DNA of 64,000 bases, from the NCBI GenBank assembly GCA_001179505.1, contig CDMY01000466.1:186001-250000 (forward strand), written 5' to 3'. Shown here in pieces: positions 50,305-58,600 of the stretch (position 1 is the first letter of the stretch; each line of letters starts with the position of its first letter). Below the pieces are notes generated by a model. The model was not told the DNA's origin. It did not search any database and saw only the letters and a program-made list of their open reading frames with translations. Origin of the DNA: Vitrella brassicaformis CCMP3155 (Eukaryota; Protista; Chromerida). A program made the translations under genes and the position numbers.

Positions 50305-50977
50305 CTCATGAGTGAGTGGATGGATGCATGACACGCCGACTGACGACAGACGCAATCAGAAAAGGTGGTTGGCTGGGTAGGCAGTGGGGGTATTTTGCCG
50401 TGCAGGTGGACGGATGGATGGATGGACGGACAGATGCACGTGTGTGTGGGTGGGCGAGTGCGCGAATGCATACACACCAACCAACGTACATAGCACCGAC
50501 TGGAGTGTGTCGTGCCGATTGTCTTGTCGATCGATGGCCCGACGCCCCGGAACTACACATACGTCCACCCACCCACCATATGTATGATAGTCCATCCAAT
50601 CCACTCAATGTGTCTGACAGATCCGATCCGTGTCATCCCGCTTGGCCTGGCTGTGCTTCACACAGGGGACGCATTGCGCCACACATACACACACACATAT
50701 GCATGCCTACACCCAGCGCGGCGTGCATATCGTCAATCGGGGAGGGAGCTGACCTGACACAGATAAATAGTAGCCTCTCGCACCCATCCCAACCCCTACT
50801 CACACGACCAGCTCGCTGCACACACCACCACCTCTCTAGCACCTAGTGACAAAACCACCCACTGCCCAACATGTCGGTCTGTCTGTCTGTGTGCCTGCCT
50901 TCGTTCCCACACACAAACCGACAAGTCCTCTCCATGCGGGGACGAAAAAGACCCGCACAGCCCTCTCTGCGTCGTGT

Positions 50978-53970
50978 TCACTGTGACACGGCTGCCATGA
51001 GGTCCCTGTACCGAGTGTCAAGCGTCGCCGAGTCCCCTTGCCTCTGCCGCTCACTGATCAGCTGGGCCGCCTCACTGCCTGTCGCCGTCACGGCCTCAAA
51101 GATCTGACACACACACACACACCAATCCAAACCAGCGTATGGACATACACCCAGTGTCCATCTCACCCAGCCCCCCACCCACCTTATTTTTCGACACTTC
51201 TGGCCGGCAGAGTGCTTGGGCGCATAGATCTGCCACCTGCTGCCTGCTCACGATACCGCCGTACTTCTCGTCTGCCCCATACACCACCAGCGGGTGTTCC
51301 CTCTCGTAGTCGTCACCGGCCCTTTCAAGCCCGCCTGGCCTCACAATGGTGTACTGGAGGCCGCTCTTCTCCAAGAGTCGTTCAGACTGCCTCTTGATGA
51401 GAAGAATGCCGCCGAACAGGTTAAGTGATGACGCCGGGAGGCCGAAGGAGCCTGTGCCGAGGCTGGTCACTAGAACAAAGTGCCGCAGCAGCTGATTGGT
51501 CTCTGTGGAGTACGGTGCAGTGGCAGCCGAGATGCGGATGAGATTCTGAACACACACACATACACATGCTGACACACTCATGTGTTGTTTGTCAAGGTTG
51601 GCCACTGACCTGTGTAATCTTCCCGTCGACCGTCGATGGTGCGGCAAGAGAGAGAGAGTTAGCCCCCAGCGCGCACACGACGAATGGGCAGCCCTGGATG
51701 GCCCTGCTGATGCTGTCCTCGTTCATCCCATCCCACTCTCTGAACTCAAGCCGGCCCTTGATGTCCTCCTCTTGCCCAATGAAGCTGCTGTTGGCATAGA
51801 TCGCCTCCGCCCGAGTGATGCCGCCCGGTCGCACCCCCGCAACAACACGCCAGCCCTGTTCCAGCAGCGATCGGACGACCCGCCTGAAGAGTTCGTCCCA
51901 CCCTCAATCAAAGACCACCAGAGGTGCGTGCGATATATAAGTGTGCGGTAAGTGATTACCTACCGTCCAGTGCGCCCAGTAGCTCCAGCGACGAACACAG
52001 GCCCCGATAGAGGCTCCAGCGACGTCCACGGCTGACCGCTGGCCTGCTCTTCCCTATCGGCCTTGACGACGGGCGGCGACGCCGACAACTCGTCGTCACT
52101 CTCTCGGCTGCTGCCGCCTTCGATCGGTATCTCTGTGGCTCTTGACCTGCCGGGGAAGCGGTCCACGAGTGTCCTCAGCAGCCCCTTCTGTGAGCTGAGA
52201 CCGAGGTAGCTGAGGGCGGCGCGGAGCCGTTGCCGCGGTGTGGGCTGCCTGATGATGTATGCAGAGCGACGTGCGATAGACGCGAGGGGGCCGCCGAGTG
52301 TCACCCGGTCGCCCAGGGCCGCCACTGAGCCGTCCAGTGGACCGAAGGTCAGCATCTCGCCAAGCTTGGTGTACCTGCAGCCAACCAACACCATGAACAA
52401 CATGCCATGCCGGTCGGGTAGGTAGAGTTGTGGATGTTTGGCATCTGCTTGACATGACATGCATCTCGCCAAGCTTGGTGTACCTGCAGCCAACCAACAC
52501 CATGAACAACATGCCATGCCGGTCGGGTAGGGAGAGTTGTGGATGTTTGGCATCTGCTTGACATGACATGCGCCACGCACCGCACGGCACGCACCTGTAT
52601 GCGAGTGGCTTTTTGTCGTTGTACGATGCCCATATGTTCCAGACGAGGTAGTCGGCCTGCTGGAAAGCCGCCTGTGCAGTGCCCTCACCCTCCACTCCTC
52701 CCAGGTCAGCCACGTCACCGATCGCATACACATCCCCAAGACCCTTGACTGCCAATGTCCGCTCCACCGCCAGCCGACCGCCCCTGCCCCTCTCCACCCT
52801 GCCGTTGACCATGTCAGCGAGGCCGCTCGCCCTCACACCAGCCGTCATGATGACTAGGTCGGCCGGCAGCACAGAGGAGTCCTCACTGCCCTTTTTCTGC
52901 ACCACCACCTCGCTGCCCGACGTGTCGCTTGCTGGCCGGATGGAGGCCACGCTTGTCTCCAGGCTGACGTCGACGCGAGCCTCGCGCAGCGCACGGATGG
53001 CCTGCTTGCGGTTGTGCTCGGCGGAGAGGGGCATCAGCTGGGGGCCCCTGTGCAGCAGGGAGATCTGGGGTGGGGGGCTCTGTGAGGAGAGGGCGGCAGC
53101 GAGGTTGGTGGCGAGCTCCACACCGATGTACCCGCCGCCAACCAAGACGACGCGGGCTGGGCGGTCCCGAATGCGCTGCAACAAACATGCCAGGACAGGT
53201 GAAGGAGAGCGATCGATGCGTGATCTGCTGTGCCTGTGTGCCTGTTCGTGTTCGTGCTACACCTTGATGCGTTGTATCTCCTTTTTGAGCTGAATAGCGT
53301 CATTGAGGGCTGTGAACCTCAGCGCCCTCTCCACTCCAGGGATGCCCCCCGCCGACGGCTCCCCACCCATCGCAAGCACCAGCCTCCCGTAACCCAGCTC
53401 CCTCCTTTCTCCTCCTGCACCGCTGACGCTCAGCTTCTTCCCATCGACGTCTATGCTGTCGACCCTGCCCTTGACGAATCGTATGCCGGTGCCGTAGAGC
53501 AGCTCCCTGAACAGCGGCGCCACCTCCGATTGCTCGGCGGTGCCCACGGCCAGCTCGTATAGCAGCGGCAGGAAGACGAACTGGTCCTTGGTGTCTATCA
53601 GTGTGATCTCGGGCTGCACCTTCCACGGCAGCTTGCTCAGACCCAAGGCCGTCAGCAGACCGCCGAAACCGCCGCCCACGATGCAGATGCGATTCGCTGA
53701 CGACTCGGCATCGCTGCCGCTGGTGCGGGCAGATGCAGCAGTGCCGTCAGCGGCTGCTGGCAGTGCTATGCCGTTCCTGCGGATAGATCTGATGGACGAG
53801 ATGGATGCCGATGGCTGCAGCCGTGATGGTGATGAGTGGCGTGGCGTGTTGCGTGGTAAGCGTGGTGCTGAGATGCGGAGGAAAGCTGCGCGGGCGCTGA
53901 TGTCGTGGTCTGCATGACAGTAGATCAGGGACAGGGTGAGAGAGATCAAGAGCTGCAGCGGCAGGCACAT
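50978..53970 (-). CDS. NDC1: Plastid-targeted type II NAD(P)H dehydrogenase (NDC1/NdbB-like) fused to a C-terminal Tic62/NmrA-like NAD(P)-binding Rossmann domain
   Basis: Signal peptide + AAF + transit peptide. RICIVGGGFGGL..ALGL...FVFLPLLYEL, VVLVGGGYIGVELA, VYAIGDVA, TAQAAFQQADYLVWNIWAS...YTKLGEMLTFG. The same exon continues without a stop into VFVAGATGRTG|RRVVRSLL...FVLVTSLG...KRQSERLLEKSGLQYTIVRPGGL...SRQQVADL...NK|IFEAV. Confidence 0.88.
52352..52569. repeat. Two-copy 109-bp direct tandem repeat spanning an intron 3' end and exon start
   Basis: 52352-52460 and 52461-52569 are identical except for one base (ggtaggtag versus ggtagggag). Confidence 0.95.
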
Positions 53971-54081
53971 TTCAACAAACGTCCTCATTGTCTGTGGTTG
54001 GAGGCGCGATCTTTTCAGGTGAAAGGGTTTTCAGGGTCTAGGGTTCTTCCCTTTTCCGAGGCAGAGCTGCTGGACAGATCG

Positions 54082-55600
54082 ATGGCGTCGGTGTGGAGGT
54101 GAGTGAGTGTCACACACAAATGCAACACACACTGGTGTGTCCGCATTGTGTCCATTGTCTGCAGGCTGCCCATTGTGCTGCTCGTTCTGTCCGTCGCCCT
54201 ATCACCGTTGCTGTCTTCTGCCGCCTTCGTCCGGCCCATCCGGCTGACACACACAGGGCCCATCGGAGTGGCACACCAACCGCAGCCCACGCCGACGTCA
54301 ACTGGAGGGAGGCCGTTGACCGCCCTGAGTGCTGGAAGATTCAACCTCTACAAGCATCTCAGCCAACGGGATCTCACCTGTGCCAACGTGGGGGCGTTAA
54401 GCGGCATCCTGATCTCTTGGTGGTTCACCATCACGGCCGCCATAGTGGGGCAGTACATCGACGCCATTTTCATAAGGTATCTTGCGTGAGGGTGGCTGCA
54501 TCGCACATCAGTCAGTCGGCTTGTCTGTATCTGTCTGTATGTGCATCTGCGTGCAGTTCGAGCGGCCAAGAGATCGTGACCAAGTGGGCGAGTGTGGAGG
54601 TTGACGCCGTTGCCGTACTTTCTCAGCTTGCCTTGGCGACAGTGCTGCTGGTGCCCCCTACCGTGTTCTGGTGAAACAAGATCCCGGGAAGTTCCACCAT
54701 AACCAGAGATCGTAACTGATGGATGGGCGGATGCAAGTCTACCCACATCCATGGACATCTTCTTGTGTATGTGTGTTGCGTCGATCAATCAGGTGACCTG
54801 CCGTCGGACGTACAACTGCTCGAGAACAGCTGGACAAAACCTGCGGCAGGAGAAGAACAGAAGCCGCTGGCTCCCATGAGGATGCGGGACATGAGTGGGC
54901 CGGATTGGAGATGCGTGTTCCTGGGCCAGGCCGTTGGCTGTCTGCTGTTCGGCTACGTCAAGGCTTTTTTTGACGTAACATCTTTGAGTATGGCGGGTGT
55001 CGAGGGGGGCGCACTCGGGCTGTTGGCGATTGCAACGTTTGCCGCGCCCACGTTGGTCTGGGGGTATTGGGTCTCCTTCTGGTGGAAGGCTGTCGTAGAG
55101 AGTGTGAGTGATGGATGGATGGATGGATGTGACGCAGAGAGAAGGTCCAGCAGCAAAGGTAGGTTTATACGTATCGAGGGAGGGATTTAGGTAAATAGGT
55201 CGGCAGTTTATGTATCGTATGTGAGTGTGTGGCGGCAGAGCACGTATTGAGGCACACACGAGCACAGGCAGGGCGAGAGGGCGGGAAGAGGGAAGTCTAG
55301 ATGGTGGCGAGAGGGCGAGTCTTTTGTCATGCGGGGACCTAGTGGACCTGGTATTCAGGTGGCTTGGTGCCTGGGGTTCGGGTCTTTTCACAGCTATGCC
55401 AGGCACACGGTCAGAGGGCCCCACCCCACCCCAGGTCTGCTGTGCGCGGACATTGGTGTGTGTATGTGCCAGCATTGGATTGATTGACCAATTGATGCCT
55501 TTGTGTGTGTTGTGTTGGTTGACGGATGGATGGATCGATCGGTTCAAAGCAGTCGCAGACAACGAAGGGAGCAAGGAAGGGATTCATTCAAGCGGCAGCA
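54082..55600 (+). CDS. Putative plastid-targeted multi-pass membrane protein with an in-frame TGA at 54672-54674; 3' end uncertain
   Basis: MASVWR|LPIVLLVLSVALSPLLSSAAF (signal + F motif), followed by several hydrophobic helices in exons at 54165-54476, 54557-54711 and 54793-55110. Confidence 0.5.
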
Positions 55601-55693: not shown

Positions 55694-58600
55694 TCATGTG
55701 TAGACGTGTTTTGTGGCAGTGATTTTCTGTCTACACCTGGGACACAGCCGCTGGTCTACGGGGCGGCTCATGAGGGCAGCCGCACAAGCGCCGCACAGAC
55801 AGAAATGGCGGCAGGGCACCAACACGACGCATCTCTTGTCAGCCATGCAGATGTCGCACTCAGTGCTCTCCTCCAGCCTGCACACACACAAGCCACCCAT
55901 TTGGCGATCATCTCTCATACGTGTTGGTCGGATCACATACCTGTCCTTCTCCCGCTTGATGGCATCCCTCTCGACCCGCATGGCCTCGAGCTGCTGCCGC
56001 AGCGTCTCCAACTCGCTCACCTCCTCACCACCACACCTGCAGACAGCCAGCGCGTACCGACAGACGCGGCCAAGGCTGGCTGATGTCTGTGTTCCCATTT
56101 CCCTCGGCTCCCTGTGCGTAAGTAAATGCGTACCTGCCCTGACCACCGCCGCCCTCGTCGTCCGCCGCCCTCTGCAAACCGCTACTGCTACCGCTACTGA
56201 TGCCTGCCAACGGGGCAAAGCCATGCCCATCGGAGCCAACACCGCTGGATGATGACGATGCGACACCTGTTGCACAGGCGGCAGATGACGGACTGGCAGC
56301 CGACGATGCCTTGGGGGTCGCTATGCCAGCAATGGGGAATGACGGCTGCTGCATCTCGTGCGGTGGTGGCAGGATGGGCACGCCGAGGCCGCGACCCGCT
56401 CCACGACGCACTGGAGCATCGCCATAGCCGCCCGGTGCACCATTGGTGGCCATGTGGGATGGGACTGGGGGAGCAGGGCGGGGTGGGCGAGGTGGCAGGT
56501 GAAAGGGGAGGGGCGGCGCATTGCCGGGGTCGCCACGCACCGACGAGCGGGATGAGGAGGGGCGAGTCGACTCGGACGAAGAAGGCAGCACTGATGTGTT
56601 AGATCTGCATGAGCACACTCACACAGACACGAGTAGACAGCCAATATAAACGGTCGGTCTTGTTGCTTGTACCTGTCGTGTGGTATGTCGGTTCTTTTTG
56701 TCTGCTGCTGCTGTGCCTCCCCGCCAGACGTTGGCTCGGTGCTGCCCTTGCCCTTCTTCCTACGACCGACCGTGACGAACCCGCCGCCCTCGACACCACC
56801 ACCACCATCAACCGCCCTCACCTGCTGCCCACTGCCGGCAGCCGCAGCCGCCGATGCAGACGAGAAGGATGAGCATGAGGGTCGGGGAGGGGACGGGGGT
56901 GAGGGGCTGGCGGGGCCGGGCAGACCATGATGGTCTTCTGTGTCCTCCTCGTGCTCATGCTCCTTGGGGTCCACGTCTATGTTGTCAGCGCCAATACTAC
57001 GTGTAGGCCAACACACACACATCATCAGCGGTCCATATGAATGGCCTCTTCTCCCGTCTGTCCAGCTCACCCACCTGGATGACGATGCCGTTTCATTGGT
57101 GTCGGTCGTCTTGGTGGCGTTGGCCCCCCTGCCGCCCCTCTTGCCCTTCGATCGCTTCTTGCCGCCCCTACTGCCGCTGCTGCTGCTGGTGTTGGTGTCC
57201 TTCTTGCCCTCATCTATGTGGTCATCTGCCAGCTCGGCCGCCAGGAGTGAGTCGGCCCGCTCGTTGGCCGCACGCTCTATCTCGTCAAAGAACTCCAACA
57301 ACTGAAGACAACATGCAGTCAATGTGGCCTGCGAACAGCCATGTGTGTGTGTCATCTGATGTGTGTCACCTCCTTGGGCACTATCAGCTGCTGATGTCCC
57401 TTGCGTCTCCCTGGCTGCCGTGCGGCCGCGCGCCTCGTCTTGACGGACTCGTGCTGGAGGATGGCCTGGGTGACGCTGTTGGGACGGGATTTGCCCCCTC
57501 GGCTGCTCACGTGATCGCCATAGCTGCACCGACAGACAGACAGACAGACAGACAGAAGTGGAGTTAGTTTTGTGGATCGGGCAGGTCTGTATGTCCGTGT
57601 GTGTGAGTGAGTGTGTACCTGACGAGAGCACTCAGAGAGCCGACTGCGACGTTCACGAATCTATCCACCTTCTGCTGGTCGACCTGGCCGCCCTTGATCA
57701 GGCAGAACGCCATCTCACATAGGGCTGTGGGAAGACCGTCACGCACAGCGATCTGCAGTACACACATACATGGCCGTCCTCCCTGCCGGCCTGTCTGTCT
57801 GCTTGCTTGCGCGTCTGACCCTTGCCCGTTCGTCAGTGAGGTCTGTGGCGGCCCCGACGATCGACACAAGCGTGTCAGCGAAGTCGGCCAGACCTTGCGA
57901 TTCCGTGCTGATGCGGGAGGGCAGCTGCGACATGATCGAGATCCATCCAGCGCGGCACAAGTCGTCATGGTAGCCACACGCTGCAAGGAGGGAACAGATA
58001 GCAACATCTCTTGTGCTGCACCCTCCCCTCTTCACCGGTCAGCACAGACGGGACATGCACAGAGAATAAGAAAGAGGCAGTGCGGGCGTAGGCGGAGATG
58101 GCGGTGTAGGCATCCAGCGCCCCTGGTACCCCCATGAAGCGCTGGGCGGGGCCGTTCGGCAGAGATGCAAAATGACCCATACCTGCGCATGAATGGGTAG
58201 ACAGACAGATACGCGTATCCACCCACGTGCGGCTATGTTGTGTACCTACCGGTCGCTCGTGTGAACGCTTTGCCAAGGAAGAAGATGTTCTCCACGGACC
58301 GGGCGGCACCGCGGCGCACGCCCTCGTCTGCGTCAGGAGACGTCAGCGTGGCGGCCAGTGTGTCGATCTGACCACATTAGCCAAGACAGACATGTGTTTG
58401 TGCTGTGCGGTGTCTGTCTTGTTTGACATCTACCAGGGGGCATATGTGCTTCTGCAGCGCCTTCAGACACTCAGCACGATCGGAATCCGACCCTGAAAGG
58501 GCACGTGCAGGGCATTAGCCGCACAACTCAACTTCCATTGTCGGTGTGCCTGAGCACCTTTGTCGCCCAAGCAGCGGATGTAATGGCAGCAGTGTGAAAG

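What the first reader, a model, noticed from the sequence alone, without database searches (positions are those of the whole stretch)
50978..53970. In-frame fusion of NDC1/NdbB-type NDH-2 with a Tic62-like Rossmann domain
Seen: one exon (about 52374 to 51965) runs without a stop from the end of the NDH-2 domain (LGEMLTFG...RQRLRAALSYL), through an acidic/Ser linker, into VFVAGATGRTG. Three more exons complete an SDR/Tic62-NAD-type domain. Known: NDC1/NdbB reduces demethylphylloquinone and other prenylquinones in plastids, and Tic62-family Rossmann proteins sense NADP(H); these are normally separate proteins. Inference: a Rosetta-stone fusion that couples stromal NADP(H) sensing or supply to quinone reduction in a secondary plastid. 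I know of no description of this fusion.
Basis: partly seen in the sequence, partly recalled or inferred. Interest (0 to 1): 0.72.

Follow-up and report, generated by a model that had tools for sequence, protein, structure and literature searches.

The report
Quinone reductase fused to Tic62 module
A real, transcribed gene of the alga Vitrella brassicaformis joins a plastid-type NAD(P)H:quinone reductase (NDC1 family) to a Tic62-type NADP(H)-binding domain in one 826-residue protein. I found the same join only in its relative Chromera, and it suggests that these two families, which share plastid lipid droplets in plants and cyanobacteria, work as a pair.

Summary
A six-exon minus-strand gene (53988-50978) encodes a Pyr_redox_2 NDH-2 domain, a roughly 60-residue acidic/Ser linker and a NAD_binding_10 Rossmann domain. 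The junction lies inside exon 3 (52374-51964).

Spliced contigs from three studies remove all five introns exactly as predicted. Each crosses the junction, and one contig covers the whole coding region.

The organism is Vitrella brassicaformis. The 826-aa protein is already in public databases under a generic name.

The NDH-2 half falls in the NDC1/NdbB (demethylphylloquinone reductase) clade. The Rossmann half is a Tic62-type N-module, 40-45% identical to named TIC62, with its NADP-binding residues kept.

Only one other protein with this architecture turned up, Chromera velia Cvel_8313 (42% identity over the full length). The two Rossmann halves are sisters, so the fusion probably arose once, in a chromerid ancestor. 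All other NDC1 and Tic62-like relatives listed were separate proteins. I found no paper describing the fusion.

The function is inferred: an NAD(P)H:prenylquinone reductase carrying a built-in NADP(H)-binding regulatory or tethering module. The literature places NDC1/NdbB and Tic62-family proteins together on plastoglobules and cyanoglobules, which makes the Rosetta-stone reading credible.

This is a new variant of known kinds, of moderate interest.

The parts
53263..53988 (-). Exon 1. It holds the start codon (53988), a hydrophobic signal-peptide-like stretch followed by a Ser/Arg/Pro-rich transit-like region (residues 1 to about 95), and the first dinucleotide-binding part of the NDH-2 domain (GGGFGG at residues 105-110).
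   Evidence: Pyr_redox_2 9.9e-15, residues 100-236; contigs start at 54017 (X6) and 53984 (X7), and the joint is 53263/53175.
52595..53175 (-). Exon 2. It holds the second dinucleotide-binding part of the NDH-2 domain (GGGYIG at residues 255-260; His-Arg at 284-285 where NADH-specific NDH-2 enzymes carry an acidic residue).
   Evidence: Pyr_redox_2 4.9e-26, Pyr_redox 5.7e-09. (alignment of that position). (joints).
52352..52571 (.). Tandem duplication of 109 bp, two copies, 99% identical. It covers the 3' end of intron 2, its acceptor and the first 22 nt of exon 3, which creates two acceptor sites. The transcript contigs use the downstream one at 52375/52374. Use of the upstream one would add 109 nt and shift the frame.
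   Evidence: TRF score 433; the only joint seen skips 220 nt, and a 58-nt contig in DNA run X3 (52433-52490) spans the boundary between the copies.
51964..52374 (-). Exon 3, the fusion exon. It carries the C-terminal segment of the NDH-2 domain (residues 437 to about 495), the linker, and the first beta-strand and glycine motif of the Rossmann domain.
   Evidence: 136 codons, no stop; contigs from X1, X6 and X7 lie uninterrupted over 51963-52298/52372.
52005..52193 (-). Linker, residues about 497-559. It is acidic and Ser-rich, poorly conserved, and 27 residues longer in Chromera.
   Evidence: alignment A1. No Pfam hit.
51610..51883 (-). Exon 4, the N-terminal half of the Tic62-type NAD(P)H-binding domain.
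   Evidence: NAD_binding_10 6e-4. (whole domain 1.7e-26, residues 566-776). (joints 51964/51883 and 51610/51545).
51183..51545 (-). Exon 5, the C-terminal half of the Tic62-type domain. It holds SLGTG, LNLFGG..K715, IVRPGG and the group-I-like motif ERAGDDYEREH.
   Evidence: (7.8e-16).
50978..51103 (-). Exon 6, with the C-terminal tail and the TGA stop (50980-50978). The 3' UTR continues beyond 50900.
   Evidence: joint 51183/51103; contigs run past 50900.

Best explanation
Shown: this is one transcribed gene of Vitrella brassicaformis encoding an 826-residue two-enzyme-fold protein. It has an N-terminal leader, an NDC1/NdbB-type type-II NAD(P)H:quinone oxidoreductase domain (about residues 100-495), a flexible linker of about 60 residues, and a Tic62-type atypical-SDR NADP(H)-binding module (about 560-800). 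The same architecture exists in Chromera velia. The two Rossmann halves are sister sequences, so the fusion most likely arose once in a chromerid ancestor and has been kept.

Inferred: the leader looks like a bipartite signal for a secondary plastid. The NDH-2 half reduces prenylquinones (demethylphylloquinone, plastoquinone) with NAD(P)H at a plastid membrane or lipid-droplet surface, as NDC1 and NdbB do.

Most likely role of the Tic62 module (inference, about 0.4 within this explanation): it binds NADP(H) without acting as a classical dehydrogenase, because it lacks the SDR catalytic Tyr. It would then set the membrane or lipid-droplet association, or the activity, of the reductase according to the stromal NADP+/NADPH ratio, as reported for plant Tic62.

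The fusion makes covalent a pairing that proteomics finds as separate proteins on Arabidopsis plastoglobules (NDC1 with At2g34460) and Synechocystis cyanoglobules (NdbB with Sll1218).
For: - Gene structure and in-frame junction.
- Domains.
- Transcription across the junction with all introns removed, in three studies.
- Identity with a public protein of Vitrella brassicaformis.
- Chromera Cvel_8313 has the same architecture, 42% identity over the full length.
- NDC1 identity: the best named hits are 'demethylphylloquinone reductase' and 'Alternative NAD(P)H-ubiquinone oxidoreductase C1'. The NDC1 clade is separated from other NDH-2 enzymes with SH-aLRT support 100.
- Tic62 identity: 40-45% identity to named TIC62 over 85% of the domain. 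The domain nests among TIC62 and Tic62-like sequences, and the two fused domains are sisters at support 98. A group-I-like motif is present (motif defined in PMC1847441).
- The residues listed as NADP-binding for 1XQ6 in PMC1847441 are conserved where aligned: GATGRTG, S692, K715, PGGL, R765. The AF2 model has pLDDT 91.8 and its best fold match is At5g02240.
- There is no Tyr four residues before K715.
- Literature: NDC1 is a plastoglobule NAD(P)H quinone reductase needed for phylloquinone (PMC3635846). At2g34460 (Tic62 family group II) is in plastoglobules, and Sll1218 is the Synechocystis group III member (PMC1847441). NdbB (24% of protein mass) and Sll1218 (5.6%) are core cyanoglobule proteins (PMC12223511). 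Chromera PSI is modelled with two phylloquinones (PMC12830998).
Against: - No biochemical, localisation or binding data exist for this protein. Plastid targeting rests on reading the N-terminus by eye.
- Contigs cannot exclude an additional internal transcription start or a proteolytic split of the two halves.
- The fused module is of Tic62 group I, whereas the proteins that co-localise with NDC1/NdbB are of groups II and III.
- Two bacterial NDC1-clade loci showed no NAD_binding_10 neighbour.
- The group-I motif is only partly kept in Vitrella (6 of 10 specified positions) and is disrupted by an insertion in Chromera.
- NAD_binding_10 relatives such as biliverdin-IXbeta/flavin reductase and ChuY are true enzymes without the Tyr, so lack of Tyr does not prove a sensor role.
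Confidence: 0.6

Rival explanations
1. A bifunctional enzyme. The Tic62-type module is itself a catalytic NADPH-dependent reductase or dehydrogenase acting in the same prenylquinone or chromanol pathway, for example on a quinone, flavin or lipid carbonyl. The fusion would then channel substrates between two active sites.
For: The fold neighbours include real enzymes of the same Pfam family that lack the SDR Tyr: biliverdin-IXbeta/flavin reductase, ChuY, pinoresinol reductase. S692 and K715 are conserved. The plastoglobule and cyanoglobule relatives are annotated as flavin-reductase-like (PMC12223511). [quoted passage not shown]
Against: No substrate is known for any Tic62-family N-module. The canonical catalytic Tyr is absent. 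The linker is long and unconserved, which does not suggest tight channelling.
Confidence: 0.25
2. A structural accessory. The module holds NADPH tightly and serves only to stabilise or anchor the reductase at the lipid surface, like the 39-kDa NDUFA9 SDR-fold subunit beside the quinone site of respiratory complex I. It would not sense redox state.
For: NDUFA9 chains of complex I appear repeatedly among the fold matches (ranks 9-49, TM about 0.58). PMC1847441 proposes a hydrophobic surface on Tic62 for membrane attachment.
Against: The resemblance to NDUFA9 is the general SDR fold (14-20% identity).
Confidence: 0.12
3. An artefact. On this reading, two neighbouring genes were merged by assembly, read-through transcription or gene prediction, and no fused protein exists.
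For: Contigs assembled from short reads cannot prove single molecules. In run X1 the 5' half lies in separate, shallower contigs than the 3' half.
Against: The junction is inside one exon with no stop and no intergenic DNA. Spliced contigs from three studies cross it, and one covers the whole coding region. Chromera, at only 42% identity, has the same order of domains with conserved residues on both sides. There is no Met at the start of the Rossmann domain.
Confidence: 0.03

Closest known systems
NDC1 (Arabidopsis At5g08740) / NdbB (Synechocystis Slr1743): demethylphylloquinone and plastoquinone reductase of plastoglobules and cyanoglobules
   Same: The N-half is a type-II NAD(P)H:quinone oxidoreductase with both glycine motifs. 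It is 34-45% identical to NDC1-clade proteins and falls phylogenetically inside that clade. It has a non-acidic His-Arg at the position that fixes NADH specificity in other NDH-2 enzymes, as many NDC1-clade members do.
   Different: NDC1/NdbB proteins are 415-590 residues with nothing after the C-terminal segment. Here a linker of about 60 residues and a Rossmann domain of about 240 residues follow. The activity was not tested.
[quoted passage not shown] 2007, PMC1847441)
   Same: The C-half is 40-45% identical to the N-terminal NADP(H)-binding module of named TIC62 proteins and nests among them in a tree. NADP-contact residues are kept, and a group-I-like ER[A]xDxY..H motif is present in Vitrella.
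   Different: There is no FNR-binding Ser/Pro repeat module, which is specific to vascular plants. The module sits at the C-terminus of another enzyme instead of at the N-terminus of its own protein. The motif is degenerate in Chromera. Any link to protein import is untested and unlikely.
At2g34460 (plastoglobule 'flavin reductase-related 2', family group II) and Sll1218 (cyanoglobule, group III)
   Same: They belong to the same protein family as the fused module, and proteomics finds them on the same lipid droplets as NDC1/NdbB (PMC3635846, PMC1847441, PMC12223511). This is the unfused counterpart of the chromerid arrangement.
   Different: They are in different subgroups. None of the retrieved relatives of the fused module carried the group II motif. 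No direct interaction with NDC1/NdbB has been reported in the papers read.
NDUFA9 (39-kDa subunit) of respiratory complex I
   Same: It is an NADPH-holding, non-catalytic SDR-fold protein attached to an NADH:quinone oxidoreductase near the membrane. It recurs among the fold matches.
   Different: This is an analogy only. The identity is 14-20%, and NDUFA9 is a separate subunit of a multi-subunit proton pump. Papers read here (PMC6668581) state that chromerids lack complex I.
LHC-like + Tic62-like fusions of prasinophyte-type green algae (for example Pyramimonas obovata, P0199)
   Same: This is another case of the Tic62-type module being fused to a photosynthesis-related domain (PF00504 + PF13460).
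   Different: The partner domain and the domain order are different, and the lineage is unrelated. It shows the module is prone to fusion, which lowers the surprise a little.

Membership tests
NDC1/NdbB-type NDH-2 | Two-dinucleotide-binding-domain flavoprotein fold (Pyr_redox_2) with both GxGxxG motifs | tested here: met
   PF07992 3.6e-44 over residues 100-416. GGGFGG at 105-110 and GGGYIG at 255-260.
NDC1/NdbB-type NDH-2 | Groups with NDC1/NdbB rather than with other NDH-2 enzymes (respiratory bacterial and fungal types) | tested here: met
   Trees: the NDC1 clade is separated from the outgroup NDH-2 enzymes at SH-aLRT 100. The best named hits are demethylphylloquinone reductase and NDC1. 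The nearest structural clusters are NDC1 and cyanobacterial NDH-2.
NDC1/NdbB-type NDH-2 | Plastid (plastoglobule or thylakoid) location | tested here: inconclusive
   Both chromerid proteins have a hydrophobic N-terminal stretch followed by small-x-small|Phe and a Ser/Arg-rich region. I read this by eye only. No predictor or experiment was available.
NDC1/NdbB-type NDH-2 | NAD(P)H-dependent reduction of demethylphylloquinone or plastoquinone | not testable with these tools
   This needs an enzyme assay or complementation of ndc1 or a ndbB deletion mutant.
Tic62-NAD(P)-related family, group I (Tic62 proper) | NAD_binding_10 / atypical-SDR Rossmann fold with an N-terminal GxxGxxG | tested here: met
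   PF13460 1.7e-26 (566-776). The sequence has GATGRTG. The AF2 model has pLDDT 91.8 and pTM 0.91, and its top fold match is At5g02240.
Tic62-NAD(P)-related family, group I (Tic62 proper) | NADP-contact residues of the 1XQ6 template (listed in PMC1847441) | tested here: met
   G/T/G/R/T of the glycine loop, S692, K715, P/G/G/L 734-737 and R765 align with the listed residues and are invariant between Vitrella and Chromera. Positions outside the two aligned stretches were not mapped.
Tic62-NAD(P)-related family, group I (Tic62 proper) | Group I signature E-R-P/A-T-D-x-Ar-K/G-E-T-H | tested here: inconclusive
   Vitrella has ERAGDDYEREH (6 of 10 specified positions). Nearly all retrieved relatives have the full motif. 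In Chromera an insertion disrupts it. No retrieved relative had the group II motif.
Tic62-NAD(P)-related family, group I (Tic62 proper) | Phylogenetic placement with named TIC62 | tested here: met
   the fused pair sits inside the clade that holds pea, Brassica and Nymphaea TIC62 and green-algal Tic62-like proteins (backbone supports 86-92, not starred). Identity to named TIC62 is 40-45%, against 42 bits to At5g02240 of group V.
Tic62-NAD(P)-related family, group I (Tic62 proper) | C-terminal FNR-binding Ser/Pro repeat module (full-length vascular-plant Tic62) | tested here: not met
   The protein ends about 30 residues after the Rossmann domain. According to PMC1847441 this module is confined to vascular plants, so its absence does not exclude membership of the N-module family.

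The most novel reading that the evidence does not exclude
The chromerid fusion is a true Rosetta stone. On this reading, NDC1/NdbB and a Tic62-family NADP(H)-binding protein form a conserved functional pair on plastid and cyanobacterial lipid droplets. The unfused counterparts would be At2g34460 in plastoglobules and Sll1218 in cyanoglobules, and possibly Tic62 itself. The Rossmann partner would gate or assist prenylquinone reduction (phylloquinone synthesis, plastoquinone and tocopherol redox cycling) according to the NADP+/NADPH ratio. That would give the long-uncharacterised Tic62-family N-module a first concrete biochemical role, outside protein import.
Probability: 0.3. Interest if true: 0.7.

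Novelty: new variant of a known kind. Interest (0 to 1): 0.55.

Why it matters
The N-terminal module of Tic62 and its short relatives (At2g34460, Sll1218) has been known for about twenty years as a conserved NADP(H)-binding domain of oxygenic phototrophs, with no defined substrate or partner. NDC1/NdbB is the quinone reductase needed for vitamin K1 synthesis and for keeping plastoglobule quinones reduced.

A conserved, expressed covalent fusion of the two in chromerids is independent genomic evidence that the families cooperate. Published proteomics supports this by placing them on the same lipid droplets in plants and cyanobacteria.

This turns a vague idea of a redox sensor into testable predictions:
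- sll1218 and at2g34460 mutants should show prenylquinone phenotypes.
- NdbB and Sll1218 should interact.
- The activity or membrane binding of the fused enzyme should respond to NADP+/NADPH.

The gene also adds a plastid redox marker shared by Chromera and Vitrella, the photosynthetic relatives of apicomplexan parasites.

Tried and rejected
- **Full-length AF2 model.** The mixed alignment A3 placed the Tic62 rows on the NDH-2 half, so I did not fold it. Only the ESM Atlas figure (pTM 0.57) is available.
- **Bacterial synteny.** The genome-contig scan used one very specific peptide pattern. It returned only distant Paenibacillus and proteobacterial NAD_binding_10 genes and no cyanobacteria. 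Two bacterial NDC1-clade loci had no PF13460 neighbour. Two short Tic62-like hits proved to be a eukaryotic contig or one too short to judge. This gives no support, but the sample is far too small to count against linkage.
- **P0188.** This 880-aa protein is the nearest neighbour of the fused Rossmann domains. I checked it for a hidden NDH-2 half and it has none.
- **His-Arg as a fusion-specific change.** Rejected. The same pair occurs in 11 of the aligned NDC1-clade sequences.
- **NCBIfam.** It gave only generic flavoprotein matches far below their cut-offs.
- **Literature.** I found nothing for Cvel_8313, for Tic62 together with chromerids, or for NDH-2 fusions. Flegontov et al. 2015, on chromerid NDH2 enzymes, is not held.
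- **ESM Atlas lead.** A bacterial cluster labelled Pyr_redox + 3Beta_HSD/Epimerase (463 aa, score 0.81) is too short for this architecture and scores below the tool's trust level. I did not follow it.
- **Limits of the word-indexed searches.** They missed the Chromera protein twice, so they are weak evidence of absence.
Full report
**What is there.** On the minus strand of the window I read a six-exon gene. The exons are E1 53988-53263, E2 53175-52595, E3 52374-51964, E4 51883-51610, E5 51545-51183 and E6 51103-50978, and every intron is GT..AG. Exon 3 translates as 136 codons without a stop. It begins with the last conserved segment of an NDH-2 enzyme (YTKLGEMLTFG...RQPTPRQRLRAALSYL). It continues through an acidic, Ser-rich stretch and ends with VFVAGATGRTG, the first strand and glycine loop of a Rossmann domain. 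The only correction is that the start codon is at 53988, not 53970.

**How the searches were run.** The full-length protein used later (P0001) was returned by a database search and happens to be identical to the model.

**Domains.** By exon, Pfam gives Pyr_redox_2 on E1 and E2 (9.9e-15, 4.9e-26) and NAD_binding_10 on E4 and E5 (6e-4, 7.8e-16), with nothing on E3 or E6. On the full-length database protein the scores are Pyr_redox_2 3.6e-44 (residues 100-416) and NAD_binding_10 1.7e-26 (566-776).

**Is it transcribed as one unit?** Eight public runs hold the stretch. I laid four of them, from four studies, on 50900-54100.
- X3 is unspliced DNA.
- X6, X7 and X1 hold spliced contigs with exactly the five predicted joints (53263/53175, 52595/52374, 51964/51883, 51610/51545, 51183/51103, allowing the stated cut ambiguity) and no other joints.
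- X6 record 14 (3984 nt) covers 54017 to 50900 in one piece.
- X7 record 17 runs from inside exon 2 to beyond the stop codon.
- X1 record 1 runs from 52298 to beyond the stop codon.

All three cross the NDH-2/linker/Rossmann junction without interruption. Contigs cannot show transcript ends, so an additional internal start cannot be excluded.

**Organism and public record.** A full HMMER scan with exon 5 against 1.84 billion representatives returned an 826-aa protein, 100% identical over residues 665-785. Its sequence equals my model residue for residue at every exon junction. It is recorded as an unnamed protein product, or FAD/NAD(P)-binding domain-containing protein, of Vitrella brassicaformis CCMP3155. 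So the architecture is present in databases but carries no functional name.

**A second fused protein.** Among the 150 best exon-5 hits, only one other protein has the match near a C-terminus beyond residue 650. This is P0075 (883 aa). It carries Pyr_redox_2 (5e-37) and NAD_binding_10 (1.8e-15). It is Chromera velia Cvel_8313, UniRef A0A0G4HSL3. The two proteins align over their whole length at 42% identity. Conserved blocks lie in both halves, for example PVFVAGATGRTGRxVVRxLLxxGWRVV, LNLFGGxLLIKR and YTIVRPGGL. The linker is unconserved and is 27 residues longer in Chromera.

**How widespread is the fusion?** Three searches looked for more fusions.
- The region search with the Rossmann half, limited to candidates of 454-1445 aa, found 409 hits. 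Among the 120 listed, only Vitrella and Chromera carry PF07992.
- The profile search seeded from the NDH-2 half found 61 hits, all standalone proteins of 454-650 aa.
- The whole-protein search found 31 hits, none of them fused.

The nearest standalone NDH-2 relatives are ochrophyte proteins from Florenciella, Nannochloropsis and Chaetoceros. The word-indexed searches missed Chromera twice, and only the top of each list is visible. 'Chromerids only' therefore means 'nothing else found', not proven absence.

**Identity of the N-half.** The best named relatives are 'demethylphylloquinone reductase' and 'Alternative NAD(P)H-ubiquinone oxidoreductase C1'. The ESM Atlas structural neighbours are the same families plus cyanobacterial NDH-2. 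In maximum-likelihood trees, the NDC1 clade, including both fused proteins, is separated from other NDH-2 enzymes at SH-aLRT 100. The chromerid sequences sit in the red-lineage part of that clade. At the position where NADH-specific NDH-2 enzymes have an acidic residue, the fused proteins have His-Arg. Several other NDC1-clade sequences have the same pair, which is compatible with NADPH use but is not special to the fusion.

**Identity of the C-half.** Named TIC62 proteins match at 40-45% identity over about 85% of the domain. In a tree of 55 domains the two fused domains are sisters (support 98). They nest with green-algal Tic62-like and land-plant TIC62 sequences.

Balsera et al. [quoted passage not shown] Vitrella has ERAGDDYEREH. 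Nearly all retrieved relatives have the full motif. None has the group II motif. In Chromera the motif is broken by an insertion.

The only solved relative found by sequence is Arabidopsis At5g02240, PDB 1XQ6. Where the two sequences align, the NADP-contact residues listed for that structure are conserved and are invariant between the two chromerids. An AF2 model of the domain is confident (pLDDT 91.8, pTM 0.91). Its best fold matches are At5g02240, then bacterial NAD_binding_10 proteins, biliverdin-IXbeta/flavin reductase, ChuY and the NDUFA9 subunit of complex I.

The domain lacks the SDR catalytic Tyr four residues before the conserved Lys, as the aligned Tic62-type relatives and At5g02240 also do. 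The FNR-binding repeat module of vascular-plant Tic62 is absent.

**Genome context.** In the Vitrella assembly, the Rossmann half finds only itself at E <= 1e-5, although about a dozen other NAD_binding_10 matches exist. The fused copy therefore appears to be the only Tic62-type module in the genome.

The NDH-2 half finds one paralog at the end of contig C748. This paralog has an NDH-2 domain followed by a long, acidic open frame of about 370 residues with no Rossmann motif. Its largest exon groups with the two fused proteins (support 95) and is nearest to the Vitrella fused gene (support 84). That points to a duplication within chromerids. Whether the paralog lost a Rossmann domain or predates the fusion is open.

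**Mechanism.** Shown: the architecture, its transcription, its conservation in two deeply diverged chromerids, and intact cofactor motifs in both halves.

Inferred from the families:
- NDC1 and NdbB reduce demethylphylloquinone and plastoquinone at plastoglobules and cyanoglobules (PMC3635846, PMC12223511).
- Chromera PSI is modelled with phylloquinone (PMC12830998), so the pathway is relevant to chromerids.
- Tic62's N-module binds NADP(H) (PMC1847441). From my own knowledge of Stengel et al. 2008, which I did not read here, Tic62's membrane association follows the NADP+/NADPH ratio.

My preferred reading is that the fused module acts as an NADP(H)-dependent regulator or tether of the reductase. 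The main rivals are a second catalytic activity and a purely structural NADPH-holding accessory of the NDUFA9 type.

The most useful outside evidence comes from the literature. At2g34460 (family group II) is a plastoglobule protein alongside NDC1 (PMC3635846, PMC1847441). Sll1218, the Synechocystis group III member (PMC1847441), is a core cyanoglobule protein at 5.6% of the mass, alongside NdbB at 24% (PMC12223511). The chromerid gene fuses members of exactly these two families. The fused module is of group I, not II or III, so this remains a lead and not proof.

**Novelty and score.** Both halves are known families, and domain fusions conserved between Chromera and Vitrella have been noted elsewhere in this scan (finding s1-226953, which I did not test). 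The Tic62 module is also fused to LHC-like domains in some green algae.

The specific NDC1 + Tic62 fusion is not described in any paper I could search. It gives a concrete, testable clue to an uncharacterised, widely conserved plastid protein family. I rate it a new variant of a known kind, with interest 0.55.

Noticed in passing
window 52352-52571: A 109-bp tandem duplication (two copies, 99% identical) covers the acceptor end of intron 2 and the first 22 nt of exon 3, giving two candidate acceptors. Transcript contigs use only the downstream one. The upstream one would add 109 nt and truncate the protein after the NDH-2 core (ORF ending at 52096). A 58-nt contig in DNA run X3 spans the copy boundary, which is what a real junction would leave in a k=31 assembly.
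   Followed up: partly
G000:C748:278200-280130 (L009:6200-8130, minus strand), at a contig end: A second NDC1-clade gene in Vitrella. It is 35-68% identical to the fused gene exon by exon. It is followed by a long acidic, Pro-rich open frame of about 370 residues instead of a Rossmann domain. Its largest exon groups with the two fused proteins (support 95). It may be a duplicate that lost or never had the Tic62 module.
   Followed up: partly
proteins P0189, P0192, P0199 (Pyramimonas obovata), P0242, P0249, P0276: Proteins of 465-582 aa carry both a chlorophyll a/b-binding (PF00504) domain and a Tic62-type NAD_binding_10 domain. This is another undescribed-looking fusion of the same module. They form two well-supported clades in the domain tree.
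   Followed up: no
proteins P0123, P0150: These have an N-terminal region with weak Apolipoprotein A1/A4/E-like matches (below the Pfam cut-off), followed by a C-terminal NAD_binding_10 domain. This may be a lipid-droplet-surface helix region joined to the same kind of Rossmann module.
   Followed up: no
window 50900 and below: The spliced contig of run X6 continues about 1.4 kb past 50900, and that of X7 about 1.3 kb. This means either a long 3' UTR or overlap with the next transcription unit. I did not examine it.
   Followed up: no
window 54100-55200: Between this gene and the RING-finger gene upstream (about 55700-56300, minus strand) lies a stretch whose plus-strand ORFs include a hydrophobic, membrane-protein-like frame (54723-55190). 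I did not analyse it.
   Followed up: no
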